Source: Blepharisma stoltei ATCC 30299
Taxonomy: Eukaryota; Protista; Ciliophora
DNA length: 64,000 nt
Direction: 5' to 3'
Assembly (NCBI GenBank): GCA_965603825.1
Contig: CBFDEM010000012.1
Location: forward strand, 1-64,000
The notes under the pieces are model-generated. The model ran no database searches and had not been told where the DNA came from. It worked only from the letters and a program-made list of their open reading frames with translations. Each line of letters opens with the position of its first letter. Within the stretch, counting starts at the first letter, position 1. This document shows, in pieces, positions 1 to 25,958 of this stretch. Position numbers and translations under genes: made by a program.

Positions 1-1216
1 ACCCTAACACCCTAACACCCCTAACACCCTAACACCCTAACACCCTAACACCCTAACACCCTAACACCCTAACACCCTAACACCCTAACACCCTAACACC
101 CTAACACCCTAACACCCTAACACCCTAACACCCTAACACCCTAACACCCCTAACACCCTAACACCCTAACACCCTAACACCCTAACACCCTAACACCCTA
201 ACACCCTAACACCCTAACACCCTAACACCCTAACACCCTAACACCCTAACACCCTAACACCCTAACACCCTAACCCCTAACACCCTAACACCCTAACACC
301 CTAACACCCTAACACCCTAACACCCTAACACCCTAACACCCTAAACACCCTAACACCCTAACACCCTAACACCCTAACACCCTAACACCCTAACACCCTA
401 ACACCCTAACACCCTAACACCCTAACACCCTAACACCCTAACACCCTAACACCCTAACACCCTAACACCCTAACACCCTAACACCCTAACACCCTAACAC
501 CCTAACACCCTAACACCCTAACACCCTAACACCCTAACACCCTAACACCCTAACACCCTAACACCCTAACACCCTAACACCCTAACACCCTAACACCCTA
601 ACACCCTAACACCCTAACACCCTAACACCCTAACACCCTAACACCCTAACACCCTAACACCCTAACACCCTAACACCCTAACACCCTAACACCCTAACAC
701 CCTAACACCCTAACACCCTAACACCCTAACACCCTAACACCCTAACACCCTAACACCCTAACACCCTAACACCCTAACACCCTAACACCCTAACACCCTA
801 ACACCCTAACACCCTAACACCCTAACACCCTAACACCCTAACACCCTAACACCCTAACACCCTAACACCCTAACACCCTAACACCCTAACACCCTAACAC
901 CCTAACACCCTAACACCCTAACACCCTAACACCCTAACACCCTAACACCCTAACACCCTAACACCCCTAACACCCTAACACCCTAACACCCTAACACCCT
1001 AACACCCTAACACCCTAACACCCTAACACCCTAACACCCTAACACCCTAACACCCTAACACCCTAACACCCTAACACCCTAACACCCTAACACCCTAACA
1101 CCCTAACACCCTAACACCCTAACACCCTAACACCCTAACACCCTAACACCCTAACACCCTAACACCCTAACACCCTAACACCCTAACACCCTAACACCCT
1201 AACACCCTAACACCCT
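1..1216 (+). repeat. Telomere, (CCCTAACA)n, ~150 units
   Basis: Near-perfect 8-mer array from base 1 with a few +/-1-2 nt variant units. CCCTAACA is the heterotrich (Blepharisma/Stentor) telomere unit. Confidence 0.99.
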
Positions 1217-1234
1217 TAAATTAGAAGTGCTCAT
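1215..1234 (-). pseudogene. 5' stub (codons 1-7, MSTSNLR) of a type-B USP paralog, truncated by telomere addition
   Basis: cttaaattagaagtgctcatatttattgaattctacaaat at 1215-1254 is identical to the start regions of the paralogs with ATG at 8372 and 16491. Confidence 0.92.
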
Positions 1235-1798
1235 ATTTATTGAATTCTACAAATCTAATATAAAAATATGGATTTCGCCTAAACTGGCTTTATCTCAGGC
1301 TATAAAATATTGATAATTAACTATCATAAAATTCTGTTGAATAGATAGGGCATAGCTTATTAAATCATGCTAAAGCTGAGATTATCATTTTAAACAATAA
1401 ATCAAAAATAGCATAAATTAAGAGCTGAAATTAAATAGATTAGTATAAGTTATCTGCTTTGTTAAGATTGAAACAAGACAGCTGAAATATTAAAAATTTG
1501 TTCGTTGAATTATTTGGCAAGAAGAATAAATTGTGAAAAGAAAAAGTTGACACATTATTTCACAGGTTATATCGAATTAATTATTAATTATTATTATAAG
1601 TTTCTGTATTTAATACCTTTGCTTTATGTGGAAGAATTGATGGAATCTTAAAAAAGATAAAGGAAAATTTAAAGCATTAAATATAAGTCATAACATTATT
1701 TTGCATCATAGCATAGCTGTTTAACCTGATTCTTTTTAATCTTTTATTAATCTTTTAAGTCAACAAGCTTAATCATGTTCAAACGAAAGAGAATAGAA

Positions 1799-4381
1799 TT
1801 AATTATTTTTCTTATAAAATGCAAGGTAAAGCCTATTCCAATCAGGATCTGTTTTGCTCACATCAGAATCATTATACTTCTCCCATTCATTTTCATCATT
1901 TTTCGTAAATGCTATAAAATTTTTCTCATATCAGCATATGACTCCGAAAAGATTGTAAAAATTATTTTCAACCTGCAAAGAACTTGGGATTTCTTGTGAT
2001 AACCGACTAGGCATATAAATTGCTAAAATGCATGGCCATTGAATGCTTTCAGTTTTCATTACAATATCTCTCATTCCTCCACAATTTGCACAATGTAATT
2101 GATTTTGCCCTGAAAAATTTTTCCAATCTTTTAGCCAATTTAAGAAGCTTTCTATGTCATTTTGCTGATTTTCTGGAATATTTATAAAATTTTGACTGTC
2201 TTCTTTTTCTTCTTTATGGTTAAATTGGCAAGTAAATGATTGTTTTTTGATAATAGAAAAGAGCTCAGGGTTCCCAACTTTACCTGAAATAATTATAAAT
2301 AAATCTTTAGGATCGTTTTTATAAAACCCGTTAAAATTTACCATCGAGTATTCTTCTGGGATGATATCTTTGATTTCTTTTATGTGGGGTCTTATTTGAT
2401 GCTCTGGAGAATTAGATTGTATTAATTGTATAACTTGTGTCAAACTTCTCAGTAATTTATCAGAGGAGCAATTCTTTATAAACTCCGCAAATTCAGTAGC
2501 GCTTGCTAAGATTTGAATAAGAGAATTCATATAGCTAGTATTTCACATATTAGGCAACCCAGATTTGCTGAAAGCTTTGCTGTGATCCGCTTTTAACCTT
2601 GGAGCTTCTTGTTGGCTACTAATACATGGGGCTTCGGCTTGAATTTCTGGATCATTTAAGAGATCTTTAACCAAATTTAGAGGAAGGATCTTTGGCTGAG
2701 GAGATATTATAGGTTGGTTACTAGGCACAATTTGAGAATAGTCGAATTCGACTGTAATTTTGGCATTTTTTTTATGTTCTAATTGCTGTATCTTATTTTC
2801 AAAGCTATCAATTTTCTCTTTATTGAATTTTTTGTCAGCTGATGATAAGGCTTCCCAATCCTTTAGTTTTTTTTCTGTTTCTTTATTTCAGCTCTCAATT
2901 TTAATTTGGAGACCCGCTAAAGTCTCATCGATTTGCTGCTTACTTGGAATATTTATAAATTTCTGGTTAATTTGTTCCAGTTTGCTTGTGAAAGAAGAAT
3001 CCAAATTGTCATATTTAAGATTAAGCATACCAATTTTAGGTTTCAAATAATTTTCCAATTCAGCAAGCTTGCATTCAGTATTTTGGTTAGACTCTTGCAG
3101 TATTTTTAAATCAATTGCAGAACTTGATTTTATTTCTTGATACAAATTATATAATTGTTTATAATTTTGATCAATAGTTGATACTAGGTCGTCATGTGCT
3201 CTTTTTCTTGCTTCCTCGATAATTGCCTCTGGATCTATATTATTCTTTGTGATATCAAATTGTTTTAATTTAGAATCAAAATTTTTGAATTTTTCATCCA
3301 ATGGTTTTATATACACATTATAAAACTGTTCATAGCTTTGATTATTAATTGATACTAGATCGCCATATGCTCTTTTTCTTGCTTTCTCAATAATTGCCTC
3401 GGGATCTATAAAGTTTAATAAATCTTCTTTGGCTTTATTGGCTTGCTGATATCTTAAAGACTCTTCATGGCTATATATTTCTAAATTTTTCTGGAGTTTC
3501 CTTTCAAATTCTTTTCTTAATCTTGCCTCTACGTCAGCTAAGGACTTTTCAATTAATATTTTTATCTTCAAATCGTCTTTTTCAGTGTCACATCCAGTAT
3601 TTTTGTCAAACTGATTTCCTATCGACTTAATCTCTCCTTTTATTTCTTTGTGATTTTCGCTATTATATTCATCACTTTCTAATATTTTTGATTCTGTACC
3701 AGACGCTTTATGATTGAACGCACTTGGAAATGGATCAGGAGATTTAAACCAATTTTTAGAAGAGAGAGCTGTAGGCTCTGCTGAAGCGTTTCTGCTGTAA
3801 AGTTCTTTTACTCTATTATCAGATAGCAATTTTTGTACTCTTTGGCTTTTCTCAGATGTTATTTTAATATCGTGATCCATCAAAGATTTTTTCAGTCTCA
3901 AATAAACCAAAGTTGTTGGGCAAACGAAATTCAACTGTCCTTTTAGTATTTTTGCTTCTTGGCTGCTACAATCATATCACTGATCATCAAATAGGCATAA
4001 GACTTGCTTATTATTAAAGCTGGAAATTAATTTATATTCACCTTCATAAATATTGAATTTTATTCTTGACTCTCTTTTTTGAACAAAAATAATATCTTTA
4101 AGATCAGTTGATACTTCGCGTAAATTTTTTTCTATTATCTGAATAAAATTATAACAAATTGGATTTCTTTTAAAAAATTCTTCAAATATATCTGATAGAC
4201 TCCTATTCAATAAGATGTAGAATTTTCAAAGAGTCCTATCAGAAATTTGGCTTCTAAAAGCGTTATTTATAATGTCATCCATCTCTTTATCACGAATTTG
4301 AAAGTTGAGGCCATGGTGAGCACTGTTATTATTTATTGTAGCTATAACCCAGCACGCAGTTCTTAAGTTAGACGTACTCAT
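1799..4381 (-). CDS. USP/peptidase C19 paralog A1, ~860 aa, predicted catalytically inactive
   Basis: One open frame with UGA=Trp from ATG 4381 to TAA 1799. Cys box reads GLPNMWNTSYMNS (C->S) and His box reads ICWYEKNFIAF (H->N). No canonical intron. Confidence 0.88.
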
Positions 4382-5753: not shown

Positions 5754-8372
5754 TTAATTATTTTTCCGATAAAATGCAAGATAAAGCCTATTCCAATCAG
5801 GATCTGCTTTAATCACATCAGAATCATCATACTTCTCCCATTCATTTTCATTATTTTTAGTAAATGCTATAAAATGATTTCCATTAAAACATATGATTCC
5901 GAAAAGGTTGTAAAAATTATTTTCAATCTGAAATAAGCTTGGAATTTCTCCTGATGACTGATAATTTGGCATATAAATTGTTAATATATTTGGCAATTGA
6001 ATACGTTCTGTCTGCATTATAGTTTCTCTCAATGTTCCACAGCTTGCGCAATTTAACTGATTTTCCCCTGAATAAATTTCCTGTTCTTTTATTTCTTTAA
6101 AGAATTTTTCTATATCATTTTGCTTATTTGTTGGAATAATTATAAGATTTGAGCAATCTTCATTATAGATTTTATGTTGAAAAGGTTGACAGGTAAAAGA
6201 TTGATTTTTGACAACAGTAAAAAGATCTCGATTTTCAACTTTATCTGAAATTATAGCAAACAGATCTTTTGCATCATTTTTAGATGATCACATATGCTAA
6301 ATAAAAAATACCTTTGAGTATTCTTCTGAAATTATATTTTTCAATTCTATTATATGCGGTCTTATAAAATAGCTATCAGAATTAGATTGTATTAACTCAA
6401 TAAGTTGGCTCAAACTGTAGAATAACTTATCTGAGGGGCAATTCTTTATATATTCAACAAATTCAGTAGCACTTGCAAATATTTGAATAAGAGAATTCAT
6501 ATAGCAAGTATTCCCTATATTAGGTAGCCCAGATTTGCTGAATAATCCACTGTGATTATCTTTTAAACTTTTGCCAGCTTTTCTGCTGCTAATATAATGC
6601 CTTCCTTCTTGAATATCCTGAATATTTATAAACTCTTTAACTGAATTCTTTGGCTGAGGAGATATTATAAATTGATTACTAGGTACAAATTGAGAATAAC
6701 TGAATTCGATTGGACTTTTGGAATTTATTTTATTTTCTAATCGCTGAATTTTATCATCAAGATCATTCCTCAGCTTATCAATTTTCTCTTCATTAAGTTT
6801 TTGGTCAGCTAATAATAAAACTTCCCAATCCTTTAGTTTTTTTTCTGTTGCTTTATTTCAGCTCTCAATTTTAGTTTGAAGACTTGCTAAATTTTCATAG
6901 ATGTTTTGCTTGCTTGGAATGTTTATAAATTTCTGGTCTATTTTTTCCAGTTTACTTGCGATAGAATAATCAGCATTTCTTGATAAAGTTTCATATTTAA
7001 GATTGAGAACGCTAATTTCATTTTTAAGATCGCTTTCTAATACAAGATGATTACATTTAGTATTTTGGTTAGACTCTTGCGGTATTTCTAAATCATTTGC
7101 AGAGCTTGAAATTTTAGAATCTTTAATTGATTTTATTTCTTGGTATCATTTTTTATCCATTTGATCTATAGCTGCTTTTAAATTATTATAAGCCCTTACT
7201 TCTGCTTCTTTAATAATCATCTCAGGATCTATATTAATTTTCGAAGCATCAAGTTTCTTAAGCTTAAGATCAAATTCTTTGAGTTTGCCATCTAAAGAAT
7301 TTAATGCCTTAGGTAAAATTTGTAATAAACCAAAGTGCTTTTTTTCTAAATTTATAAGCTCATTTTTTATATTCATCATTTTTTCCTGTTGCATTTGAGC
7401 ATAATTAACTGCAGAGTTAAATAGTTCTTCTTTGGTTTTATTTACTTGCTGATGTTTTAAAGACTCTTCATGTTTGTATTTTTCTAAACTTTTCTGGAGT
7501 TTCACTTCAAAATTTTTTGTTAACCTTGTCTCAATATCTAAGCATCTTTCATTAAATATTTTTATAATTTGATCGATTTTAGAGTCAGAATCAGCAGTCT
7601 TGCTAGTTTCTCTATCTCTGAAAATATTACCTCTTTCTACTTCTTCTTTATTATATCTTCTTTCTGTTACTTCTGATATTATAATCATATTATTATAATT
7701 TTGCTCCCGTGATAATGGTTTAGGAGAGCTGGAAAGGTTTCTGGAAACAGAAGTAGGCTCTGCTGAAGTATTTCTTTTAGCAATTCCATTTGATTTAATC
7801 TCAAATGTTAATTGTTGTACTCTTCGGTTTTGCTCAGATGTTATTTCAACGTTGTTAGCTATCAAAGGCTTTGTTTTATCTCTCATGTAAACCAAAGTTG
7901 CTGGAAAAGTGAAATCAGGTAATCCTTTTATTAATAATTCTCTATTACTGTTGCAATCATACCACTGCTCGTTAAATAAGCAAAATGCTTGCCTTTCATT
8001 AAAACTGGATATTAGTTTATATTCGCCTTCGTAAATATTTGCATTCATTTTAGACGTTCTTTTATAAACAAAAAGAACATCTTTTAGATTAGTTGATACT
8101 TCTGGTAAGCGCAAACTTTCTATTTTCGGAGTTATATATCTGCTTCAAGTTGGGTTTCTTTGAAAAATTGCTTCAAATGTATCTGAAAGGCTCTTGCCTA
8201 ATAAGTTGTGGAACGTTTTAAGATTGCAATCTCGAATTTGGTGTCTGAAAGCGTTAGCTATAGTTTCATACAATTCTTTATCATAAAGTTGGAAGTTGAG
8301 TTTATTGTAATTACTGCTGTTGTTAATTGCAGCTATAATATAGCACGCAGTTCTTAAATTAGAAGTGCTCAT
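5754..8372 (-). CDS. USP/peptidase C19 paralog B1, ~867 aa, one 15-nt intron (6297-6311)
   Basis: Continuous frame with UGA=Trp. Cys box GLPNIGNTCYMNS, finger CASC, His box NGNHFIAF...WEKYDDS. Intron gtattttttatttag. Confidence 0.92.
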
Positions 8373-9927: not shown

Positions 9928-12900
9928 TTAATGATATTCTTTCTTCTTATAAAATGAAAGATAAAGTTTATCCCAATCAGGGTCATTTTTGCTGACTCTA
10001 TTATCATCATATTTCTCCCATTCGCTATTTTTATCCTTAGTAAATGCGATGTAATGAAACCCATAATAACATATTACTCCAAAAATTTGATAAGTCTTAT
10101 ATCCAATCTGCAACTCATCTGGGATTTCATTAAAACCCTGGTAATCAGGCATATAAATTGTTAAAATATTTGGTCAATTAACTTCTACAGTTTCCAGAAT
10201 TATATTTCTCAATTCTCCACATCCATCGCACATTAATTGATTTTGCCCATAAAAATCCTTCTTTTCTCCAACAATATTGTTTAAAAATACTCTAATATTG
10301 TTTTGATAATTTTTTGGAATAATTATAAAATTTGAAGATTCTTCGGTATATGATCTATGATTGATAGGGCATATAAAAGCTTGTCTTTTAACCAATGTAA
10401 AAGGATTTGCATCTTCAATATTATCTGAGATGATTAAAAATAGCTCTTTAGAATCATTTGGAGACCTTCCAACATACTAAATAAATATTACCATCGAACA
10501 TTCTCTTGAAATTATATCTTTAAATTCACTAATATGCTGCCTTAGTGCACTTTCTGAAGTGTTAGCATACATTAATGATATAACTGAATGTAGGCTCCGT
10601 AATAATTGACTGCTATGATTGCTGCTTATTGATTTTGTAAATTCAAGAGTGCTTGCTAATATTTGTATGACAGAATTCATATAGCAGGTATTTCCTATAT
10701 TTGGCAAGCCTGATTTGCTATAAATTTGAGATTTTATTGGTAGAGTTTGAGCCTGAGTGTTTATAGGCCGTCTTTGAATTTTAGATTCTTGATAATTTTG
10801 AGAATTTATATTTTGTCTTGATGGCAGACTCACTGTTTGGTCATGCATCTGATATGCGGCTTGAAGTTCATTTGAACGAATAGCAGATTGTCTGAAAATT
10901 TCAGACTTATATTTTTCTATTTCTTCCTCAATTGTTTTAAGCTTTTTATCTGTTAATTCTTGGCTACTAGCTAGTTCAGATATTTCCTCCTTTCTAATAT
11001 TATTGCTTTTTAGTATATTTTCGATGAAATTATCAGCTTGCAATTTCAAATCCCCCAATCTCTTATTTAAATCATTACTTTGAGTCTTAAGCTTTTCGGT
11101 TTCAGATTTATTGGTTTCAGATAGTTTACCAATGCTATTAATTTGATACTTTATTTCTTCAATATCTCTTTTGAAATCATTTATTTTTGTATCATTTTCC
11201 TTTTTAAAATAACTATATGGAAATTCAAAATTCGATTTTACTTCATTTATTTCGTTTTTAATACTCTTTTTCTCTTTATCGATATATTCTTTTAAGCTTC
11301 TTTCGATTTCAATAAGTCTAGCTTGCATTTCATCTTCATCAGTTGGCTCTAATCTGAGCTCAATTGAGCTTATTTTATCTTTTAGGTTATTTATCTCAAC
11401 TTTTAAAATTTCAATATTCTTTTCTGAAATTTTTGATTCTTTCGTTGGTTTTATTTCAAGGTACAAATTATATAATTGTTTATAATTTTGATCAATAATT
11501 GATACTAAATCTTCATGTGCTCTTTTTCTTGCTTCCTCAATAATTGTCTCTGAATCTATATTATTCTTTGGGACATCAAATTGTTTTAATTTAGAGTCAA
11601 AATCTTTGAATTTTTTACTCAATGGTTTTATATACTCATTATAAAACTGTTCATAACTTTGATTATTAATTGATACTAGGTCGTCATGTGCTCTTTTTCT
11701 TGCTTCCTCAATAATTGCCTCTGGATCTATATTATTCTTTGGGATATCAAATTGTTTTAATTTAGAATCAAAATTTTTGAATTTTTCATCCAATGGTTTT
11801 ATATACTCATTATAAAACTGTTCATAACTTTGATTATTAATTGATACTAGGTCGTCATATGCTTTTTTTCTTGCTTTCTCAATAATTGCGTCTGGATCTA
11901 TATTATTCTTTGGGTCATCAAATTGTTTTAATTTAGAATCAAAATTTTTGAATTTTTTATCCAGTGGCTTTAATATATTTGGTAACAGCTGGAATAAGTC
12001 TAGGTATTTTTTTTCTAAATTTATAAACGTGACTTCTGCTTTTTTCATTATTTCCTGATGCATGTCAGAATAATTGCTTATAAAGTTTAATAAATCTTCC
12101 TTAGCTTTATTGGCTTGCTGATGTCTTAAAGGCTCTTCATTTCTATATATTTCTGAATTTTTCTGGATTTTCGATTCAAATTCGTTTCTTAACCTTGCCT
12201 CCACTTCAGCTAAGGACTTCTCAATTAATATTTTTATTTTTAAATCATCTTTTTCAGCGTCACAACAAGTATTTTTACCAGGCTGATTGCCTATCAGCTT
12301 ATTCTCTCCTTCTATTTCTGTGTACTTTTCACTATTGTATTCATCATTTTCTAATATTTTTGATTTTATATCAGACGTTTTATGATTGAACGCACTTGGA
12401 AATGGATCAGGAGATTTAAACCGATTTTTAGAAGAGGGAGCTGTACGCTCTGCTGAAGCGTTTCTACTGTAAAGTTCTTTTACTCTATTATCAGATAGCA
12501 ATTTTTGTACTCTTTGGCTTTTCTCAGATGCTATTTTAATATCGTGATCCATCAAAGATTTTTTCACTCTCAAATAAACCAAAGTTGTTGGGCAAACGAA
12601 ATTCAACTGTCCTTTTAGTAGTAGTTTTGCTTCTTTGCTGCTACAATCAAACCACAGATCATCAAATAAGCATAAGACTTGCTTGTCATTAAAGCTGGAA
12701 ATTAATTTATATTCACCTTCATAAATAGATTCTTTTATTTTAGACTCTTTTTTTTGAACAAAAAGAATATTTTTAAGATCAGTTGATACTTCGGGTAATC
12801 CTCTTTCTATTGTCTGAATAAAATTATAGCAAATTGGATTTCTTTTAAAAAATCCTTCAAATGTATCTGATAGACTCCTATTCAATAAGGTGTAGAGTTT

Positions 12901-13056
12901 TGAAAGAGTCCTATCAGAAATTTGGTTTCTTAAAGCGTTAGTTATAATTGCATCCATCTCTTTATCATGAATTTGAAAGTTGAGTTTATGACGAGCGCTG
13001 TTATTATTTATTGTAGCTATAACCCAGCATACAGTTCTTATGTTAGACGTACTCAT
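9928..13056 (-). CDS. USP/peptidase C19 paralog A2, ~1037 aa, one 15-nt intron (10477-10491)
   Basis: GLPNIGNTCYMNSVIQ, CDGC finger, YYGFHYIAF...WEKYDD. Intron gtaatatttatttag. TGA at 10174 aligns with Trp (QWP) of paralogs. Confidence 0.93.
11460..11972 (-). repeat. Intragenic tandem repeat, 3 x 171 nt (57 aa), in the coiled-coil of A2
   Basis: Unit KPLDEKFKNFDSKLKQFD.PKNNIDPEAIIEEARKRAHDDLVSINNQSYEQFYNEYI. Anchor positions 11521, 11692 and 11863 give a 171-nt period. Confidence 0.93.
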
Positions 13057-13791: not shown

Positions 13792-16491
13792 TTAAAATCT
13801 ATTTTTCTTATAAAATGCAAGATAAAGTCTATTCCAATCAGGATCCATTTTACTCACTAGAGAATCATTATACTTTTCCCATTCATTTTGATTATTTTTA
13901 GTGAATGCTATAAAATGGTTCCCATAATAGCATATAACTCCAAAAATGCTATAAAGATTATTATAATCAATCCTCAATGAATCTGGAATTTTACTTGAAG
14001 ACTGATAATTCGGCATATAAATTGCTAAAATTTTTGGCCATTGGATACTTTCAGTTTTCATTATAGTTTCTCTCAATTTTCCACAGTTCGTGCAATTTAA
14101 CTGATTTTCCCCTGAATAAATTTTCAATTCTTTTATTTCCTTAAAGTAATTTTCTATATCATTTTGCTTATTTACTGGGATAATTATAAAATTTGAGCAA
14201 TCTTCATTATATTCTTTATGTTGAAAAAGTTTGCAGGTAAACGATTGATTTTTGACAATAGTAAAAAGATCTCGATTTTCAACTTTATCCGAAATAATAG
14301 CAAACAGCTCTTTTGCATCATTTTCAGAAGATCCTATAAACTAAATAAAAAGTACCATTGAGTATTCTTCTGAAAGTATATTTTTCAATTCTATTATATG
14401 CGGTCCTATAAAATAGTCATCAGAATTAGATTGCATTAACTCAATAATTTGGCTTAAACTGAGGAATAATTTATCTGAGGAGAATGTTTTTATATATTCC
14501 ACAAATTCAGTAGCACTTGCAAATATTTGAATAAGAGAATTCATATAGCAAGTATTCCCTATATTAGGCAACCCAGATTTGCTGAAAGCACTGCTGCGGC
14601 TAATTATATTTTTTTTAATAGATTGTTGAAAGCTGGGATATGCTCTTTCATTTTTAATTTGCTGGTAGCCTGAGGGCTCTTTAATTGATGCATGAGGGAG
14701 GCTTTTTGATTGATTAACTAGTGATAGCTCCATACTAGATACATTCCGAGAATTACTGATGTGAGTTTGGCTCTCAGGAGAATAAGTCTTCATCGTTTGG
14801 CTCTCTGATTGCTTATAATTATCGTGTGCGTTATCTAAATTATTTTTTAGATAATTTTTCATCTCAGGTAATTTTGGAGAGATAGTCTTTGATTGGTCTG
14901 CTATTGGATGGATATTCTGCTCATTTTGATGATCACTAATTTCGATAGAATACCCGGGATAAAGTCTATTCGTTTTAATTTCTAATTCCTTTATCTTATT
15001 GCTTGCGTTACTTATCTCATTCTTATTGTCTGAAATTGATTCTTCCAGGAAGTTAATTTGCGCTTTAAGAGATTCCCAATCCTTTAAGCTACTTCCTCTT
15101 TCATCTTTTCAGCTATTAATTTTATTTTGAAGACTAGTCATTTTTGTCTCGATTTCTTCCTTATTTGGAAGATTTATAATTTTTCGGTCAATATCTTTCA
15201 ACTTGTTATTGATATCCTGAATAGAATAATCCTTATTTTTGATTTCGTTGTATAATTTTTCATACTTGGCTTTCAAATTGCTAACTTCTTTGTTGAGGTC
15301 ACTAAACTTATCTTCAGTAATTTTATAAATCTCATTCTGTACTTCTTCTTTTAATTTTTCTGAATTAATTGATGGATTTAAATTTCTAGAAACTTTGTCT
15401 TTGAGTTTGCTAACTAAAGAATTTAATGCCTTAGATAAAATTTGTAATAAACCAAAGTGCTTTTTTTCTAAATTTATAAGCTCATTTTTTATATTCATCA
15501 TTTTTTCCTGTTGCATTTGATCATAATTAACTGCAGAGTTTAATAGTTCTTCTTTGATTTTATTTACTTGCTGATATTTTAAAGACTCTTCATATTTGTG
15601 CTTTTCTAAACTTTTCTGGAGTTTCGTTTCAAAATTTTTTGTTAATCTTGTCTCAATTTCTAAGTATCTTTCATTAAATATTTTCATAATTTGATCGATT
15701 TTAAAGTCAGAGCCATCAGTCTTTCTAGTTTCTCTATCTCTGAAAATATTGCCTCTTTCTACATCTTCTTTATTATATCTTCTTTCTGCTACTTCTGATG
15801 CGGTATTCAGATCTTTATAATTTTGCTCATGTGAAAATGGTTTAGGAGGGCTGGAAAAATTTCTGGAAGCAGAAGTAGGCTCTTCTGAAGTATTCCTTCT
15901 AGCAATTCCATTTGATTTAATCTCAAATGCTAACTGTTGTACTCTTCGGTTTTGCTCAGATGTTATTTCAACGTTATTAGCTATCAAAAGTTTTTTAACT
16001 CTCATATAAACCAAAGTTGCTGGAAAAGTGAAATCAGGTGATCCTTTTATTAATGATTCTCTATTACTGTTGCAATCATACCACTGCTCGTTGAATAAGC
16101 AAAAGGCTTTTTTTTCATTAAAACTGGAAATTAGCTTATATTCGCCTTCGTAAATATATGCATTTATTTTAGACGATCTTTTATAAACAAAAAGAACATC
16201 TTTTAGATTAGTTGATACTTCTGGTAAGCGCGAACTTTCTATTTTCGGAGTTATATATCTGCTTCAAGTTAGATTTCTTTGAAAAATTGCTTCAAATGTA
16301 TCTGAAAGGCTTTTGCCTAATAAGTTGTAGAAATTTTTAAGATTGCTCTCTCGAATTTGGTGTCTGAAAGCGTTAGTTATAGTTTCATGCAATTCTTGAT
16401 CATAAAGTTGGATGCTGAGATTATTGTAAGTACTGTTATTGTTGATTGCAGCTATTACATAGCACACAGTTCTTAAATTAGAAGTGCTCAT
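13792..16491 (-). CDS. USP/peptidase C19 paralog B2, ~894 aa, one 15-nt intron (14341-14355)
   Basis: Continuous frame with UGA=Trp. GLPNIGNTCYMNS, CTNC, YYGNHFIAF...WEKYNDS. Intron gtactttttatttag. Confidence 0.92.
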
Positions 16492-17382
16492 ATTTATTGA
16501 ATTCTACAAATCTTATTACAAATATATATAAAAATTAAATATTTTTCTTCGCTCTAAAATCCCAAAAAGATTAGCCAAGAGCTAATTTATTGGCAAAAAT
16601 CATCCAGGTTAAAAACAGATTAAAATAATACAACTTTAGAGTTAATGCTAAAAATAAGAAAAATCGGCATTTTAGGGAGTGATGACTGTAATTAGATTAA
16701 ATTAAAAATTTAGAGTTAATTCTAAAGAAGCTATAAGTTAATATTTACCAAAATAATAAAGATAGAAGCTATAAATGAGTTTATTTAATATTAATTTTAA
16801 GTTATGAAGTTTATTGATTTAAGTTGAGGACTCAATGTGATTCTATATCTTAAAGAATTGAAAACTCAAAAAATAACTTATTTTATTCTCATAAACTTCT
16901 GGATACCATGATAACAGTAGTCTTTAAGAATTCCATCACTTTTGAATTAGTTTTATTAATATTTTATCGTATTTTTACTTCATTATTTAATATTTATTAC
17001 AATTTATCATACTTCTTTCTGAAATAAACTTTAAAGTACTTCAGCTTTTCTCAAATCGTTTATATAAAATTTATTAATTTTATTATTACCTAAACTTCAA
17101 GATAAAATTCTGCATTGAACTTAGAGATAGGCAAAAACGTCTAAAAGAAATAAAACTGAAAGCATAGTCTTCAAAAATTTTATTATATTTTAATTTGGCG
17201 TTGATACTTATATTATCAGCTATATTTAGTCTGTTTAAATAAGAGGAGAAACGAGCTCAATAAAATAATCAAATTAAGGAAACCCACTTGTGAGTCAATA
17301 AACTTCAGAAAAATAATTCAAATATCAAATTAACTTTAAATTGGAAAATTATAGATTCAAAATAAAATATATATTTTTATAA

Positions 17383-17640
17383 ATGGAGCCTAAAAAGTTA
17401 GTTATAATTTTAGAAAGCAGCGATGGTGTTACAAGAACCCAAGAAGTATATGAGCAATGGAAGTACTCAGGACTAGCCCAAGTTATAGAAAATATTTATA
17501 GGATACCTAAAGATACTCAATCAATTGTTTTCGAAAGGAAATTACTGAAGTATGCTGAAGACAAAGACAAAACATTGGGAGAATTGGGAATAAAAAACAA
17601 CTCTAAAATATTTGTCATGCATTATTCGCCAGGAGGTTAA
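17383..17640 (+). CDS. Small ubiquitin-like protein, 85 aa, free C-terminal Gly-Gly (UBL-1a)
   Basis: Beta-grasp pattern RIPKDTQSIVF / KTLGELGIKNNSKIFVM (ubiquitin: GIPPDQQRLIF / RTLSDYNIQKESTLHLV). Ends SPGG-TAA. Confidence 0.88.
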   Translation: MEPKKLVIILESSDGVTRTQEVYEQWKYSGLAQVIENIYRIPKDTQSIVFERKLLKYAEDKDKTLGELGIKNNSKIFVMHYSPGG

Positions 17641-18232
17641 AAAAGCTCGGATATTTAGAAATATTTTAATATCAATTTGTAGAAACCAAAGCTAAAAATT
17701 TAAGAGATAGAATAGTTTGCATGTAAACATTACTTGATAAAAAATTACTAGAGAAAGGGCAATACAAGCTTTAACTAAATTAAATGAATTTTCACTGCTT
17801 GAGCGATCTTGTCAACAATATTTTAAAATTTCTTTTTTGTATTTTACCCGAAATGGAATCACAGTTTTATTAAGAATTAGGATTCTCTTTCCCTATAATA
17901 GAAGATTTGGTGAGAAAGATTAAATGTAATCCGCCTCAGTTTGCCTTGCTTGCCTTTTTTCGCTGATTCTACAAGAGGCATGAGTTTTTATTATTTTGAC
18001 TTTTTAGCTAAAATTCTTTAAGACTGAATCAAGAAAATGCTTATTTAAAAATATTCCATTCTATCCCTAGCAAAACTTGGGCAGCTAAGCAATATACTTC
18101 TCATTTCCACTTTTTTGAATAAAATTTAGAGCTCTTTATCAAAACAAACTCAATTGAATAGCTATTTCTTCATAAATTGCTATCTTTTGAATTATAAATA
18201 TTTATAATCGTAAGCTATTAATATTTTATAGA

Positions 18233-18520
18233 ATGGCACTTGAAAGAATAACAATAAGACTAGAAGACATCAATGGTATTACCAATACACAAGAAGTCTT
18301 TAGAGACTGAAAATACTCAAATCTGGCAAAGAAAATAGCTGATATTTATGGGGTACCGAATGATCAGCAATCTATCGTGTTCCAAAAACGAGTATTGAGA
18401 TTTGATCAGCATAGTCATATAACTTTAAGGGAATTGGGAATAGTAAATAATTCAGTAATAAAAGTTATGCATCGGCAGTTGGGAGGCAAAAATCAAGGCT
18501 TGAATAATTATCAGAATTAA
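18233..18520 (+). CDS. Small ubiquitin-like precursor, 95 aa, QLGG plus 10-aa tail (UBL-2a), absent from the ORF track
   Basis: MALERITIRLEDINGITNTQEVFRDW(TGA)KYSNLAKKIADIYGVPNDQQSIVFQKRVLRFDQHSHITLRELGIVNNSVIKVMHRQLGG-KNQGLNNYQN. The TGA aligns with TGG of UBL-1a. Confidence 0.9.
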
Positions 18521-19231: not shown

Positions 19232-19522
19232 ATGGAGCCTAAAAGGTTAGTTATAATTTTAGAAAGCATCGATGGTGTTACAAGAATCCAAGAAGTATAT
19301 GAGCAATGGAAGTACTCAATGCTAGCCCAAGCTATAGAAAATATTTATAGGATACCTAAAGATGCTCAATTAATTTTTTTCGAAAGGAAATTACATAGGT
19401 ATGCTGAAGATAAAGACAAAACATTGGGAGAATTGGGAATAAAAACAACTCTAAAATATGTTTCATCCATAAGAAACCAATGTGTTAAGTATAATTGGAT
19501 ATTTAGAAATATTTTAATATAA
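19232..19522 (+). pseudogene. UBL-1b, frameshifted copy of UBL-1a with Gly-Gly lost
   Basis: A6->A5 at ~19441 shifts the frame. Even the corrected frame ends ...HKKPMC* instead of HYSPGG*. Confidence 0.7.
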
Positions 19523-20084
19523 ATTTGTAGAAACGTAATCCAAAAATTTAAGGATAGGATAGTTTGCATATAAGCATATATCACTTGATGAGAAAATACT
19601 AGAAAGAGGACAGCACGGGCTTTAACTAAAATAAATGAATTTATCACTGATTGAACGATCTTGTCAACAATTATTTTAAAATTTCTTTTTTGTATTTTGC
19701 CCGAAATGGAATCACAGTTTTATTCAGAATTAGGATCCTCTTTCCTTATAATAGAAGATTTGGTGAGAAAGATTAAATGCAATCCACCTCAGCCTACCTT
19801 GCTTGCCTTTTTACGCTGATTCTACAAGAGGCATGAGCTTTTATTATCTTGACATTTTAGCTAAAATTCTTTAAGACTGAATCAAGAAAATGCTTATTTA
19901 AAAAATTCCATTCCTATCCGCAGCAAAACTTAGACACTAAGGCAATATACTTATCATTTCCACTTTTTTGAATAAAATTAGAGCTCTTTATCAAAACAAT
20001 CTCAATTAAATAGCTATTTCTTCATAAATCACTATCTTTTTGATTACAAATATTTATAATCCTAAACTATTAATATTTTATAGA

Positions 20085-20372
20085 ATGGCACTAGAAAGAA
20101 TAACAATAAGACTAGAAGATATCAATGGTATTACCAATACACAAGAAGTCTTTAGAGACTGAAAATACTCAAATCTGGCAAAGAAAATAGCTGATATTTA
20201 TGGGGTACCGAATGATCAGCAATCTATTGTGTTCCAAAAACGAGTATTGAGATTTGATCAGCATAGTCATATAACTTTAAGGGAATTGGGAATAGTAAAT
20301 AATTCAGTAATAAAAGTTATGCATCGGCAGTTGGGAGGCAAAATTCAAGGCTTGAATAATTATCAGAATTAA
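20085..20372 (+). CDS. UBL-2b, 95 aa, near-identical to UBL-2a (QLGG-KIQGLNNYQN)
   Basis: Same frame structure with one UGA=Trp. Differences from UBL-2a are mostly synonymous, plus N->I in the tail. Confidence 0.9.
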
Positions 20373-21222: not shown

Positions 21223-21987
21223 ATGGGCTGTGGAGGAAGCACAAAAAATAAAATAGTCCTCGAGATAGAGACCTGTGGCATTGAAGAAGTAGATAGCATG
21301 TTTATTGGAGCTGCAGAGCCTCTTAAAGCTCTCGATAAAGCCTACCATAAGCTTAAAAAACAAATTAAAAAGTTTAAAAAGGCAACAGGCTGCTATATCT
21401 TAAAAGACGCCACATTCACGGATGCACTGGAATCAATGCTATTTTGCTTTTCCGCCTCAATAGATGGTGACTTTAGTAAAATCGATCTCCAAGTAACAAC
21501 AGGAAAGCCATATATTAAAATAAGCAAGGACGGTCTTAAGCCTGAGCATTCCCATGTTGCAGATGCCTGGGATCTGATGCTTGGAGTATTAGAAGAGTCT
21601 ATAATAAAAGCGCCTCAGCTTTTTGGACAATTAAGAGATTTCTGGCTGAATATCTTGCAATTGCAATCCCAAGCTGATAAGGCATTAAAAGGGGTAAATT
21701 TTGTCAACAGAAGTAAAGGGATGAAATGCTGCCGAGCAAATACAATGATACTGGCACAGGGTAGTAAGGCTTTTGCTGATTTCCAAAACACAATTTCTCA
21801 AGTTAATCAAGATGCTGGGAGCTTTGCAAATAAATGCTGAAGAGAGCAGCAAGAATTGATAGAAAAAGTTGGAAAAGATGCGAATAAAGATAATATTTAT
21901 GAGCCAAAAGAGATTATTAAAAAGTTTTGGCCAGATCATAAGAGAGTTGACCTTTCTTTGGATAAACCTCCAAAGCAAAAAAAATAG
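21223..21987 (+). CDS. Uncharacterised helical protein, ~254 aa, N-terminal MGCGGS dual-acylation motif
   Basis: Frame continues through TGA 21838 to TAG 21985-21987. MGC start suggests myristoylation plus palmitoylation. Confidence 0.8.
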
Positions 21988-22249: not shown

Positions 22250-23506
22250 ATGAAGTGCTGAAAATTAGAATGCCCTAGCGAGCCTATCTTTTTTTGTCCA
22301 TGCTCAGAAATTGGAACTAATTCATGTGAAGTCCATTTAATTGAGCATCTCAGATTTAAAGCTCAAAAAGTCCACCAGCCAGAAGCTATCTACTATAAGT
22401 CATGCCCAGAAACAAAGCAGGCTCTTTATAGTTTTCTGAAAGCGAGGAATGAAGACCTAGACAAATTGAAATTAATTATCATAAACGAAATAACTAAAAG
22501 AATTAAAGAGCTCAATTCTCATCTGATAATTGCATTGGAAGAAATCAAAAGAGTTGAGAACAAAAATTTAGAATATATGCGAAGAATTATTTCAACTGAA
22601 AATACATCAAAAACTAATAAAATCGAAAATTTTTTGACTTGGGAGCCTAACACTGCTCTTAGAAGTATAAAAAGCTGCCTCTTAAGAATCGATAAGACAA
22701 AAATTCCAAATTACATTAATTTTGACTTTGATAACTTTAAAGACCCTTATGACGAAATAGCTATTTTTCGAGATAATACAAAAAACCTATTGAGAATAAA
22801 TTTAAATGATTTTGGATATGAAGAAACTGAACTTGCAATAGATAAAAATATGAGTATGCATTTATCAATTTGCAAACTTCCAGATAGTAGACTATTCTGC
22901 TTTGGAGGATGCAATCCTTATAGTTCATCGGCATTTATGATATACCCAGATAATAGCATAAAATATCTTGCTAGTAGATCAGTGCCATGTGGGTTTTCAA
23001 GCGCTATTTATTACAATGGAGAAGTTTATGCATTTGGAGGACAAAATGCTAATGGATATGTAATGACTCCAGAAAAATACAATATTTCTCAAGATCAGTG
23101 AAGTTCACTTCCCAAATTGAGTACTGGGGCAAATTACTGCACTGGTTTTGCTTATGATAATGAAATTTACTTTGCAGGTAGCGAACATAAAGAGATTTAT
23201 ATTTACAGAAATTATCATGATCCTTACTCAAGGCAAATATCCAATTTAATTCCTAACTCCCAAAAGGTGCTTTTACTTTTCAATCATTCTTCGTATCTTA
23301 TAATAGAAGGTAATTTTAAGATGCGTGAATTTAAAGATATTAAAAATCTAAATCCTACAATAACTGATTGAAACTTTAATTGAATTGGAACTTTAGCATC
23401 TCAAGTTGTTCAATTTAATGGTGATGCATATTTTATTGATAGCAACTTCTATCTTTATAAATTTGATCTAGCCAAAAAAGTTATTCAGCAATTGAGAAAA
23501 ATATAA
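22250..23506 (+). CDS. B-box-like Zn finger + coiled-coil + Kelch-like propeller, ~418 aa
   Basis: MKCWKLECPSEPIFFCPCS...SCEVHLIEH at the N-terminus. Kelch motifs LFCFGG and VYAFGG...EKYNISQDQW(TGA). Ends TAA 23504-23506. Confidence 0.85.
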
Positions 23507-23656
23507 CTTATTTAAATAAAAATTAAACTTGGAGTAGAAATATAAGCAAAGACATACTAAACTTTTTAGCAATTAAAATTGTTAATATAATTAATTAATA
23601 GAAAAATAGATTGAAATCTCACCTAAATCTCGCGCTATTTTTAATTATTAATTAAA

Positions 23657-23765
23657 GTGATTTTCTCGTCTTAAAAGGTATTGGCTCGTATACAGAAGAC
23701 ATAGCACTCTACCACCTTCAGAACGCCAATTGCGGAGCGAAGCGATTAGTGTAGTAGGATTCTAA
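23657..23765 (+). ncRNA. GC-enriched intergenic island with U6 snRNA-like blocks followed by a U2-like block (identity uncertain)
   Basis: Colinear blocks TAAAA..TTGG..CG.ATACAGA.AGA..TAGCA, ACGCCAATT, GAAGCG, then GATTAGTGTAGTA...TTCT. The core is degenerate. Confidence 0.25.
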
Positions 23766-24290
23766 ATACTTTACTAATTTACCTAATCTAATTATTTTTA
23801 TTAAAATTCTTATTTATTAGTTGGCATGCTGAAAAAATTAAATAAATTGCTTTATTCATAAATAATTTATGCTTATCTAGCAGACAAAAGTATTTTGATT
23901 AATATGTGCATAGTAATCAAGACTCTAAAAATTATAGAAATTAAAAATGCTTAGGCCGACCGATATCGCTAACCCAGTTTTTCCTATCTGAGCAGGGATT
24001 TTGAAATAAAAAACTCAGAATGCTAACTGGCTAAATCCACGACCATGAAGTGGGTTAGACCAATTTTTCCTTATATAATGAAGTCAAAATTATTTAAAAT
24101 AAATTATTAAATGATTAGAAACCGGCATAATCTACATGCTGCTTTTTTTCGGCTCATTCCATCCCCTAAAAAATATTATAAAATTCCTTCCTAACAGCAG
24201 CTATTTTCAAATCAGCCTATGCATATGCATTTTTAAAATCAGCCCGATGCATGATAGCGGGCTAGGCCAGTTGACGTTTCTTTTATAAAA

Positions 24291-25958
24291 ATGTCAGTCC
24301 CCAATAAATTATCATCTAATTGTCAGGATATAAGTAAAAGAAGCAAAAACACTAAAAACGGGTCAAAAAACTTAGCTAGAGTTGCTAAAGCTCCTAAAGC
24401 ATCTCAACAAAAACCAAAAATAGACAAAGAGAGTCTAAACCTAAATAGAAATGAAATTCATATAAGTCATTTAAATACTTGCCGCATAGATAGAGAAGAA
24501 ATGAAAGAAATTTATGAATTCGCTTATAATATCGCTAAAAGTAAAAGCCCAAGTAATAGGAGAAATAATGATAAATCCTTTCAAAAAGATCAACTTTGAA
24601 GCCCTCAAACTCCAACCAACTCTAATCAGGCATCTAATTTAAGCAATCTACAACCTTCAAAAGATGATAAAAATAAAGGGATTCAGAAAAAGCCAAGCGG
24701 ATATAAATTTGTAGAAAAGAAATATAACTATTTCAATAAATATCATGGAAAAATTGGATATCAACCTCAAGAGCAGAATTTTGAAGCTAAAAATTTTCAA
24801 AGTAGCCCGGCTTTGCCAGTAAACGAAGATAATATAAAAATCCCTCCACCTCAGGTAAACAATTTAAGTTCCAATGATAGCTCTATTAGCAAACAGATAA
24901 AACGAAGTGCTTCATTAGGCCTCAATAAGCAAGAAAAGGTCTCCGATAATTATAGAGCAATGGATAAAGCTATAAATAGCACAAATCCTGGCGGCAACCA
25001 AATCGAATTAAAAAATGATATGTCCCAAATCTTTAGTTTTGAATTGGGAAAAATTAGCAGTCAAATAGTTCAAGCTTATCATACAGCTGAAAACTTCCAA
25101 AACATAGATAATCCTAATTCTGACATTATCTTGCCCATCCCAAAATCTAGCCCTAAAGTTAATTGCAACATTGGCTTACCTTGCATTGGTAATAGTTGCT
25201 ATATGAATTCTGTGCTGCAAATACTTGCAAGCACAGAAGGCTTTGATGGAATCATTTCTACAATTAAGATTCCTTTGTTCTCTAGTCTTGCTAATGTTTT
25301 GCAGATTATAAAAAGCAAATCAGAGCATAATTTATCTTTACATTTATCCCAATTCAAAAATGCATTAGGCTCAGAATTTTCAATGGTAACTTTTATTTAG
25401 CTTCAAGGATGAAGACAAAATGACCCTAAAAATCTATTTCAAATTATTGTTTCAAAATTAACTGAGCAAAAGCCTGCATTTAACTTATTTTTAATACAAC
25501 TAGAAAAAATTCTGATATGCAGAAGCCATGAGGCAGTTATAAAGAATGAAAATATGTCGATTTTTATGGTGGATACAAGTAAGAAAAGAAATATGCAGAG
25601 TTATGTAGACGAATTAAAGAATCCTGAGAGCTTTAAAGGGGCAAATGCACTTTACTGTGACAGATGTGGATGCTTGAGGGATATGGTAATTGAAACAAAA
25701 CATATTGAGACCTCTGCTAATTTAGTTTTTTATTTATTTCCATCTGCGTATTTTATTCCAGACAGTCACATATACATTGAAAATAACGACTATACGCTTT
25801 ATGGAGTCATCTGTTATAAAGCTTCTGGGTGTTATTCTGCTTTTACTTATTGTGAAGCTGGAAGTACCTGAATTGAATATAGTTGCTCAAAGATAGCACC
25901 TGTTGATCTGCCTGATTTTAGATATGTTTGCATGCTTTTCTATAAAAATAAAATTTAA
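24291..25958 (+). CDS. Divergent USP/C19 paralog, ~550 aa, low-complexity N-terminus, predicted inactive, 15-nt intron 25386-25400
   Basis: GLPCIGNSCYMNSVLQ intact, CDRC finger. His box reads YKASGCYSAF...WIEYSCS, so His and Asp are lost. Intron gtaacttttatttag is at the same position as in the array. Confidence 0.87.

What the first reader, a model, noticed from the sequence alone, without database searches (positions are those of the whole stretch)
1215..25958. Subtelomeric cluster of non-canonical GG-ended ubiquitin-like modifiers head-to-head with an amplified USP protease array: candidate private UBL system
Seen: four small UBL genes (17383, 18233, 19232, 20085, + strand) start ~0.9 kb from, and diverge from, an array of USP genes (- strand). 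A further USP and a possible DeSI relic lie within 10 kb, and both parts were recently amplified. The UBLs do not look like ubiquitin, NEDD8, SUMO or ATG8: the body is ubiquitin-like but strongly diverged, and UBL-2 ends HRQLGG, reminiscent of Smt3 HREQIGG. Known: conjugated UBLs need an exposed GG, made and recycled by cysteine proteases (e.g. the ISG15/USP18 pair). Inference: a lineage-specific modifier with dedicated maturation/deconjugation enzymes and dead 'reader' paralogs, possibly in defence or development. No E1 or E2 is visible in the window.
Basis: partly seen in the sequence, partly recalled or inferred. Interest (0 to 1): 0.85.

Follow-up and report, generated by a model that had tools for sequence, protein, structure and literature searches.

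The report
Ciliate's private ubiquitin-like tags and erasers
At one chromosome end of the ciliate Blepharisma stoltei, four small ubiquitin-like tag genes sit beside five unusual tag-removing protease genes; matching activator and carrier genes lie in sister clusters elsewhere in the genome, which points to a separate, undescribed protein-tagging pathway that no experiment has yet shown.

Summary
Behind a CCCTAACA telomere (1-1215) lie five USP genes and four small ubiquitin-fold genes. Three of the UBLs end in Gly-Gly, either bare or followed by a 10-residue tail.

The apparent stops in the USPs are 15-nt introns. Three USPs keep the catalytic triad; two (A1, C) have lost it. UBL-3 is a frameshifted pseudogene. 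No DeSI relic was found.

The window holds no E1 or E2, but the same genome does. The UBL family (40 hits) lies almost entirely inside arrays of this divergent USP type. Sister, mostly subtelomeric clusters add a fast-evolving UBA1 paralogue and a separate clade of UBE2D-like E2s. That E1 has lost Asp591 of the ubiquitin Arg72 pocket.

A modelled complex puts the UBL-1 tail at the USP active site (0.86 against 0.00 for controls). UBL-2 and UBL-4 are under purifying selection.

Best reading: this is a satellite array of a Blepharisma-specific UBL conjugation system, analogous to ISG15. Conjugation, expression and biological role are all unproven.

The scan noted the E1/E2 clusters before, on other pieces of this genome. 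No paper describing them was found.

The parts
1..1215 (.). Telomere: 149 CCCTAACA repeats (C-rich strand shown).
   Evidence: GC skew -0.75.
1216..1254 (-). Relic of the first 6 codons (MSTSNL) and the upstream region of a further USP gene, cut off by telomere addition.
   Evidence: Nearly identical (one mismatch near its end) to about 39 bases at 16478-16516. Window 1215-1749 is 89% identical to the spacer plus USP start in the C8 array (L061).
1799..4381 (-). USP A1, 860 aa. Catalytically dead: Cys to Ser (NTSYMNS) and His to Asn. The intron site has degenerated and is read through.
   Evidence: Segments are 98.6-100% identical to a copy in the C8 array (P0274).
5754..8372 (-). USP B1, 867 aa after removal of the 15-nt intron at 6297-6311. 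Cys, His and Asp are intact.
   Evidence: (P0275).
9928..13056 (-). USP A2, 1037 aa, with an intron at 10477-10491. The triad is intact. The coiled-coil middle carries internal repeats at 11427-11977.
   Evidence: (P0273).
13792..16491 (-). USP B2, 894 aa, with an intron at 14341-14355. The triad is intact. It lies head-to-head with UBL-1.
   Evidence: P0276; alignment to USP2.
17383..17640 (+). UBL-1, 85 aa, ubiquitin fold. It ends ..HYSPGG directly before the stop, so it is born mature.
   Evidence: (P0001).
18233..18520 (+). UBL-2, 95 aa. It ends ..HRQLGG followed by a 10-aa tail, so it is a precursor form.
19232..19522 (+). UBL-3: pseudogene copy of UBL-1. A 1-nt deletion in an A run removes the GG end.
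   Evidence: dN/dS 1.24 against UBL-1. No contig lies on it.
20085..20372 (+). UBL-4: copy of UBL-2 with one amino-acid difference, in the tail.
   Evidence: dN/dS 0.08. The coding sequence is 98.6% identical while the flanks are 89%.
24291..25958 (+). USP C, 550 aa, with an intron at 25386-25400. The Cys box is kept, but the His box reads GCY and NDS reads SCS, so it is probably inactive.

Best explanation
The window holds a satellite array of a Blepharisma-specific ubiquitin-like conjugation system.

Proposed mechanism:
1. UBL-2 and UBL-4 are made as precursors. One of the triad-intact cluster-type USPs (B1, A2 or B2) trims their 10-residue tail after Gly-Gly. UBL-1 is made already mature.
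2. A dedicated UBA1 paralogue, encoded in sister clusters, activates the free Gly-Gly. The C15 copy of that E1 is intact.
3. The UBL passes to E2s of a separate UBE2D-derived clade and is attached to target proteins.
4. The same USPs take it off again.
5. A1 and C, which lack catalytic residues, might bind the UBL without cutting it.

Shown here: gene structures, catalytic residues, family relations, genome-wide linkage, selection on UBL-2/4, and a modelled USP-UBL complex.

Inferred: every biochemical step, the E1-UBL pairing, the targets and the biological role.
For: - UBL fold and Gly-Gly register match ubiquitin. AF2 pLDDT is 90.5; the best structural matches are ubiquitin and the ISG15 C-domain at TM about 0.8.
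- Three USPs keep Cys, His and Asp/Asn in register with USP2.
- Modelled B2 catalytic domain with UBL-1: score 0.86, best of 3 controls 0.00. This mark was reached by 51 of 78 solved complexes and 2 of 108 mismatched pairs. The runs agree in at least 96% of contacts and the partner's pLDDT is at least 89. Gly84 of UBL-1 touches Cys648.
- Of 40 own-genome hits to the UBL family profile, 37 lie inside arrays of the low-scoring USP type (C8, C9, C11, C12, C15/C35, C18, C55).
- 33 of 70 such USP hits, against 2 of 70 canonical USP hits, lie within 20 kb of an E2.
- The C11 cluster carries two E1s, three E2s, three USPs and two UBLs. The C15 cluster carries an E1, about seven E2s, about 11 USPs, and mono-, di- and tri-UBLs ending in GG.
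- The cluster E1s form a long-branch clade (stem 0.79) sister to heterotrich UBA1.
- The cluster E1s have replaced Asp591 of the ubiquitin Arg72 pocket and lost the DPPE motif. That motif is kept in 16 of 17 canonical UBA1s, with one variant, DPPG (pocket residues from PMC3731359).
- All 9 cluster E2s fall in one clade with 100/99 support, apart from the canonical E2s.
- dN/dS is 0.08 for UBL-2 against UBL-4 and 0.35 against the C1 copy.
Against: - No E1, E2 or E3 lies in the window.
- Expression is not shown. The runs are only guessed to be RNA, and their contigs also cover ORF-free spacers.
- Decay is common. UBL-3 is a pseudogene and USPs A1 and C are dead. One C11 E1 has lost its catalytic Cys and the other is frameshifted.
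- The complex model cannot tell this UBL from ubiquitin, and may pass from memory of solved USP-ubiquitin complexes.
- The proximity counts are not independent, because the genes sit in tandem arrays, and C35 partly duplicates C15.
- No relative's genome could be examined.
Confidence: 0.55

Rival explanations
1. A subtelomeric gene nursery with no separate pathway. Ordinary ubiquitin-system genes were duplicated together and are drifting. On this reading the USPs still act on ubiquitin, and the UBLs are unconjugated leftovers or stand-alone ubiquitin-fold proteins.
For: - Many broken or dead copies: UBL-3, A1, C, two of the three cluster E1s, and an E1 relic in the C8 array.
- Mosaic identity and 99-100% identical segments between chromosomes show ongoing duplication and conversion.
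- GC is low (26-31%) in the first 30 kb.
Against: - UBL-2/4 show purifying selection, and their coding sequence is far better kept than the flanks.
- The Gly-Gly end recurs across mono-, di- and tri-UBL members of the family.
- Four different gene families each form their own divergent clade and co-localise repeatedly.
- The E1 Arg72 pocket has changed, while many family UBLs lack Arg72.
Confidence: 0.25
2. The UBLs are non-covalent partners of the USPs (regulators, decoys or inhibitors) and are never conjugated.
For: - The model gives a confident USP-UBL interface.
- Dead USP paralogues could serve as binders.
- The window itself has USPs and UBLs only.
Against: - A strictly kept terminal Gly-Gly, cleavable tails, and E1/E2 genes beside family members in C11 and C15 would all be unnecessary for a pure binder.
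Confidence: 0.12
3. A cassette of foreign origin (giant virus or mobile element) carrying its own ubiquitin-system genes.
For: - Low GC.
- A reverse-transcriptase gene lies beside the C15 cluster.
- Weak language-model look-alikes of the USP N-domain among Nucleocytoviricota, at 0.81-0.84, which is chance level.
Against: - The cluster E1s branch beside heterotrich UBA1.
- The genes use TGA = Trp and the host's typical 15-nt introns.
- No viral hallmark genes were seen.
Confidence: 0.03

Closest known systems
ISG15 system of vertebrates (ISG15, UBA7, UBE2L6, USP18)
   Same: - A lineage-restricted UBL about 30% identical to ubiquitin, which occurs as tandem UBL domains in some members.
- An E1 that is a diverged UBA1 paralogue.
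- A dedicated E2 and a dedicated USP-family protease.
- Some forms carry a short tail after GG.
   Different: - The genes here are physically clustered and amplified many-fold.
- The tails are not LRLRGG.
- The USPs carry a long coiled coil and an unknown N-domain.
- There is no evidence of induction or of an immune role.
- There is no sequence-level orthology.
FAT10 / UBA6 / UBE2Z
   Same: - A di-UBL modifier that ends in GG without processing, like UBL-1.
- It is activated by a UBA1-derived E1.
   Different: - UBA6 also charges ubiquitin.
- The genes are not clustered with USPs.
- The Blepharisma family includes mono-, di- and tri-UBL forms.
Prokaryotic UBL operons (bacterial Bil-type defence systems; the Caldiarchaeum E1/E2/RING operon, PMC5654768)
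   Same: The tag, activator, carrier and protease genes lie side by side as one module.
   Different: - Those systems use JAB/Rpn11-type proteases and minimal E1/E2 proteins.
- Here all parts are eukaryotic types: a full multi-domain UBA1, a UBE2D-like E2 and a USP.
- They carry host introns, and each gene is presumably transcribed on its own.
Canonical ubiquitin with USP2-like deubiquitinases
   Same: - Beta-grasp fold and GG register.
- USP catalytic motifs.
- The predicted binding pose.
   Different: - About 30% identity, with a 4-residue insertion.
- A shared NNS motif in place of ubiquitin's KES.
- Position 72 is Tyr in UBL-1.
- PF00240 is only just passed.

Membership tests
Ubiquitin family (Pfam PF00240, beta-grasp) | Profile match above the curated cut-off. 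| tested here: met
   UBL-1 scores 26.9 bits and the UBL-2 piece 27.7 bits against a cut-off of 25.4. Whole UBL-2/4 score 33 bits in the genome scan. UBL-3 fails.
Ubiquitin family (Pfam PF00240, beta-grasp) | Beta-grasp fold. | tested here: met
   The AF2 model has pLDDT 90.5, with four strands, a helix and a final strand. Foldseek TM is 0.78-0.86 to ubiquitin, ISG15 and SUMO.
Conjugated (type I) UBL modifiers | C-terminal Gly-Gly in the ubiquitin register, free or followed by a short tail. | tested here: met
   UBL-1 ends GG-stop. UBL-2/4 end GG plus 10 aa. The spacing from the last strand is the same as in ubiquitin. UBL-3 does not meet this.
Conjugated (type I) UBL modifiers | A cognate E1 and E2 exist. 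| tested here: inconclusive
   None lies in the window. Divergent E1 and E2 clades sit next to family UBLs in the C11 and C15 clusters. The pairing itself is not shown.
Conjugated (type I) UBL modifiers | Covalent, GG-dependent attachment to targets. | not testable with these tools
   This needs biochemistry or proteomics.
Ubiquitin proper, NEDD8, ISG15, SUMO | Close sequence kinship and the family's tail motif (LRLRGG, LALRGG, QTGG). | tested here: not met
   - About 30% identity to ubiquitin.
- phmmer against the PDB gives E about 0.03-0.1 to mono- and di-ubiquitin, and no NEDD8, ISG15 or SUMO hit at E up to 1.
- The tails are HYSPGG and HRQLGG.
- The only close relatives among 1.84 billion representatives are B. 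stoltei cluster UBLs, plus two short metagenome fragments.
USP / peptidase C19 (PF00443) | Cys box, His box and Asp/Asn of the catalytic triad. | tested here: met
   Met for B1, A2 and B2. Not met for A1 (Ser and Asn) or C (His box GCY; SCS in place of NDS).
UBA1-type E1 (sister clusters, outside the window) | Full domain set, catalytic Cys, and the ubiquitin Arg72 pocket (Asn574, Gln576, Tyr586, Asp591). | tested here: inconclusive
   - All five Pfam domains are present.
- The catalytic Cys is kept in the C15 and C11-left copies and lost in C11-right.
- Asn, Gln and Tyr are kept, but Asp591 is Gln, Gln or Trp (PMC3731359).
- So this is a UBA1 descendant with an altered specificity pocket.
DeSI / PPPDE (PF05903) | Profile match in the window. 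| tested here: not met
   The genome has four hits, none of them on this contig.

The most novel reading that the evidence does not exclude
Blepharisma runs a rapidly diversifying family of ubiquitin-like modifiers (mono-, di- and tri-UBL). Each variant co-evolves with its own USPs, E2s and a re-tuned UBA1 paralogue. The genes are organised as mostly subtelomeric islands that exchange cassettes between chromosomes. This would be an ISG15-like, possibly defensive or self/non-self system that arose independently in a protist. The window would be one of its variant stores.
Probability: 0.3. Interest if true: 0.85.

Novelty: new variant of a known kind. Interest (0 to 1): 0.7.

Why it matters
Dedicated UBL cascades built from a UBA1 paralogue are known mainly from vertebrate immunity (ISG15, FAT10). 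An independent case in a ciliate would matter for three reasons:
- The tag, activator, carrier and eraser genes sit physically together and are amplified. That would show that new modifier pathways can arise repeatedly by duplication of the whole ubiquitin toolkit.
- It would give a rare eukaryotic example of a functionally coherent gene cluster.
- It would offer natural series of co-varying E1, E2, USP and UBL sets for studying how specificity is re-tuned.

It is directly testable with a handful of recombinant proteins.

Tried and rejected
- DeSI relic: PF05903 gives no hit on this contig.
- USP N-terminal domain (about 170 aa) as a miniature pseudo-USP:
  - Pfam finds nothing there.
  - The AF2 model has pLDDT 44 and is unusable.
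  - hhalign against the catalytic domains gives probability 0.05.
  - Atlas look-alikes score only 0.81-0.84, which is chance level.
  - The domain stays unknown.
- B-box-kelch gene at 22250-23506 as a linked E3 adaptor: the family has at least 139 genomic hits, so its nearness here and beside the C1 UBL copy is probably chance.
- Relatives outside B. stoltei:
  - Word-based searches found only the species' own proteins.
  - The exhaustive profile search added only polyubiquitins and two short metagenome fragments.
  - The metagenome locus scan could not run, because the alignments lack a conserved enough stretch.
- Intron confirmation by reads: no contig bridges the intron sites. The database annotation does splice them as predicted.
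The C8, C9 and C18 clusters are therefore known mostly from hit tables.
- Joined exon models were used only inside scripts, to count length and to align. No self-joined model was sent to a search tool; searches used single exons by reference or the database's own annotated proteins.
Full report
WHAT THE WINDOW IS

The window starts with 149 CCCTAACA telomere repeats at 1-1215. TGA is read as Trp: UBL-2 has TGA where its paralogue UBL-1 has TGG. The genome is 41.5 Mb in 64 contigs. Protein hits name Blepharisma stoltei, assembly GCA_914767885.1. GC is 26-31% over the first 30 kb and 33-42% beyond.

THE USP GENES

With code 4 the - strand carries four long USP genes, and the + strand carries a fifth.

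Introns:
- Four of the genes seem to end in ..MV(I/L/T)FI-stop and then resume in frame.
- The DNA at that point is a 15-nt GT..TAG unit: GTATTTTTTATTTAG, GTAATATTTATTTAG, GTACTTTTTATTTAG and GTAACTTTTATTTAG.
- These are short introns at 6297-6311, 10477-10491, 14341-14355 and 25386-25400.
- Removing them gives 867, 1037 and 894 aa. These are exactly the lengths of the deposited proteins P0275 (B1), P0273 (A2) and P0276 (B2), which are spliced at the same place.

Catalytic residues:
- An alignment to human USP2 puts the Cys box (GLPNIGNTCYMNS), the QQDA-like motif, the His box and the Asn/Asp in register.
- B1, A2 and B2 keep all three catalytic residues.
- A1 has Ser for Cys and Asn for His, and its intron site has degenerated.
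- Gene C keeps the Cys, but its His box reads GCY and its NDS reads SCS.

Architecture: each array USP has an N-terminal domain of about 170 aa of unknown fold, a long coiled-coil middle, and a compact catalytic domain of about 260 aa.

THE UBL GENES

- UBL-1 (17383-17640, 85 aa) ends HYSPGG-stop.
- UBL-2 (18233-18520) and UBL-4 (20085-20372), both 95 aa, end HRQLGG plus 10 residues.
- UBL-3 (19232-19522) is a copy of UBL-1 with one A lost from an A run, which destroys the C-terminus.
- Pfam ubiquitin is passed narrowly.
- Identity to ubiquitin is about 30%, with a 4-residue insertion. The Gly-Gly sits in exactly the ubiquitin register.
- The AF2 model has pLDDT 90.5 and is a beta-grasp. Its best structural neighbours are ubiquitin and the ISG15 C-domain at TM about 0.8.
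- By sequence, PDB ubiquitin scores only E 0.03-0.1. No NEDD8, ISG15 or SUMO chain appears at E up to 1.

DUPLICATION AND SELECTION

- The UBL-1 plus UBL-2 unit is a 1.85-kb tandem duplicate at 90.8% identity.
- B1 and B2 are 92% identical in the N-terminal part and 86% in the C-terminal part, with an unalignable middle.
- A1 and A2 share 87% only in the N-terminal half.
- The array is therefore mosaic.
- UBL-2 against UBL-4: dN/dS 0.08, with the coding sequence 98.6% identical and the flanks 89%.
- UBL-2 against the dispersed C1 copy: dN/dS 0.35.
- UBL-1 against UBL-3: dN/dS 1.24.
- UBL-2/4 are therefore constrained, and UBL-3 is a pseudogene.

THE CHROMOSOME END

- About 39 bases at 1216-1254 nearly repeat the start codon region and upstream sequence of B2 at 16478-16516, with one mismatch near the end.
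- Window 1215-1749 is 89% identical to the spacer and USP start that follow the A1-like gene in the C8 array (L061).
- A1 itself has 98.6-100% identical segments in that array.
- The telomere was therefore added at about codon 6 of a further USP gene, and the two arrays exchanged sequence very recently.

THE REST OF THE GENOME

This part changes the reading. Searching the genome with UBL-1 found copies on C1 and near the far end of C11. ORF reading and Pfam gave the following.

C11 cluster:
- Two UBA1-type E1s with the full domain set (one of them frameshifted before the UFD), three UQ_con E2s, three USPs carrying the same intron, and two UBLs.
- All of this lies within 23 kb of the telomere.

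C15 cluster, partly duplicated on C35:
- One E1, about seven E2s and about 11 USPs.
- UBLs of 82, 180, 181 and 244 aa, which are mono-, di- and tri-UBL forms ending GGF, GG plus 12 residues, GG plus 6 residues and GG plus 6 residues.
- In the NCBI record it reaches to within a few kb of the contig end.

UBL family scan:
- A profile of the family (A3) finds 40 places in the genome.
- 37 of them lie inside arrays of the low-scoring USP type, on C8, C9, C11, C12, C15/C35, C18 and C55.
- The exceptions are C1 and C41.

USP and E2 proximity:
- 33 of 70 low-scoring USP hits lie within 20 kb of an E2 hit, against 2 of 70 canonical USP hits.
- At the level of loci, four of six multi-gene arrays have an E2 nearby.
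- The hits are not independent, because they sit in tandem arrays.

E1/E2 relics:
- The window and C8 are the two arrays without an E2.
- C8 still holds a 100-aa E1 relic.

ARE THE E1 AND E2 GENES SPECIAL?

E1:
- The three cluster E1s (P0003, P0004, P0005) are only 45-47% identical to the species' canonical UBA1 (P0006) and to the Stentor UBA1s. Nothing closer exists among 5.8 billion proteins.
- In a tree they form a clade with 100% support. Its stem is 0.79 changes per site, and it sits beside the heterotrich UBA1s.
- Yeast Uba1 binds ubiquitin Arg72 in a pocket made of Asn574, Gln576, Tyr586 and Asp591, and the ubiquitin E1 is strict for Arg72 (PMC3731359).
- In my alignment these four residues and Cys600 fall at the right spacing in the canonical sequences.
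- The cluster E1s keep Asn, Gln and Tyr. They have Gln, Gln or Trp in place of Asp591.
- They have also lost the DPPE motif, which 16 of the 17 canonical sequences keep and one varies to DPPG.
- Position 72 of the family UBLs is Arg, Tyr, Lys, Gln, Phe or Cys.
- The C15 copy and the left C11 copy keep the catalytic Cys. The right C11 copy has lost it, and the left one is frameshifted before the UFD.

E2:
- The cluster E2s are nearest to UBE2D among solved structures, and they keep HPN and the catalytic Cys.
- All nine that I could extract, plus three dispersed genes, form a clade with 100/99 support. That clade is separate from the canonical E2s, including the UBE2D orthologue.

DOES THE USP BIND THE UBL?

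- The B2 catalytic domain with UBL-1 scored 0.86. The best of three controls scored 0.00.
- This mark was reached by 51 of 78 solved complexes and 2 of 108 mismatched pairs.
- The runs agree in at least 96% of contacts, and the partner's pLDDT is at least 89.
- UBL-1 residues 79-85 lie in the cleft, and Gly84 touches Cys648.
- This shows a ubiquitin-like pose. It does not show specificity, and it may be recalled from solved USP-ubiquitin complexes.

EXPRESSION

- Four runs of one study hold parts of the stretch. Their kind is only guessed to be RNA.
- Their contigs lie on the B2 gene body, on UBL-1 (17432-17644) and on UBL-2 (18249-18470). None lies on UBL-3.
- They also cover spacer DNA at 17960-18115 and 19603-19947, where there is no ORF of 35 aa or more conserved between the two copies.
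- This is suggestive at most.

READING

Four gene families (UBL, USP, E2, E1) each have a divergent, species-restricted clade, and those clades sit together again and again. The most economical explanation is a separate conjugation pathway that arose by duplication of the ubiquitin toolkit. The window would be a USP-plus-UBL outpost of that pathway, relying on E1 and E2 genes encoded elsewhere.

The main rival is a decaying gene nursery with no separate pathway. The many broken copies fit it. The constraint on UBL-2/4, the conserved Gly-Gly ends and the altered E1 pocket do not.

A non-covalent role for the UBLs and a foreign origin for the cassette are less likely; the rival entries give the reasons.

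KNOWN AND NEW

- The system works like ISG15/UBA7/UBE2L6/USP18 or FAT10/UBA6, but it is not a member of either by sequence.
- Its clustered layout recalls prokaryotic UBL operons, yet every part is of the eukaryotic type.
- Full-text searches for Blepharisma with ubiquitin, and for lineage-specific UBL systems in ciliates, found no description.
- The deposited proteins are unnamed or labelled generically.
- Earlier notes of this scan describe the E1/E2 clusters on other pieces of the same genome. I had reached them independently, before reading those notes.

Noticed in passing
window 1216-1254 (and 1215-1749): The telomere abuts the first 6 codons and promoter region of a lost USP gene. The matching spacer and intact USP start exist in the C8 array (L061:15256-15812, 89%). 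The chromosome end was therefore made by breakage inside the array.
   Followed up: partly
window 44106-49015 (-): Two paralogous genes carry two N-terminal ubiquitin-like domains (PF00240 hits at 46140-46565 and 48581-49009). Their C-terminal part has a GYSLGGR lipase-like motif. These are built-in UBL domains and are not GG-ended modifiers. The second copy seems split into two ORFs (46041-46571 and 46607-47146).
   Followed up: no
window 22250-23506 (+): A Cys/His-rich N-terminus plus kelch-repeat protein. It belongs to a very large family, with at least 139 hits and 491 candidates in the genome, often in tandem arrays (for example C44:636-688k).
   Followed up: partly
window 21223-21987 (+): A 254-aa ORF starting MGCGG, a possible N-terminal lipidation motif. 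It has no Pfam match.
   Followed up: no
window 17960-18115 and 19603-19947: Public contigs of unknown kind cover these spacers between UBL genes. No ORF of 35 aa or more is conserved between the two repeat copies. The cause could be UTRs, a non-coding RNA or DNA carry-over.
   Followed up: partly
L061:22883-23162 (C8 array, NCBI contig 8): A frameshifted relic of about 100 aa of the cluster-type E1 (residues 230-329) lies inside a USP-only array. This is a sign that the arrays descend from complete E1-containing clusters.
   Followed up: partly
L013:4800-7871 and L009:372-3406 (C11 cluster): Two E1 copies flank the C11 cluster in inverted orientation. The right copy has lost the catalytic Cys motif (ILTDNL) and has altered ATP-site residues. 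The left copy keeps the Cys but is frameshifted before the UFD.
   Followed up: partly
L057:11464-14359: A 774-aa reverse-transcriptase (RVT_1) gene lies next to the 82-aa UBL at the edge of the C15 cluster.
   Followed up: no
window 11427-11977: Internal direct repeats of about 170 nt (82-92% identical) lie in the coiled-coil part of USP A2. The coiled-coil middles of B1 and B2 are unalignable although both ends are 86-92% identical.
   Followed up: no
G000:C1:223384-224298: A PP-loop ATPase resembling the tRNA-thiolation protein that works with URM1 lies about 3 kb from the dispersed UBL-2 copy on C1. This is probably coincidence.
   Followed up: no
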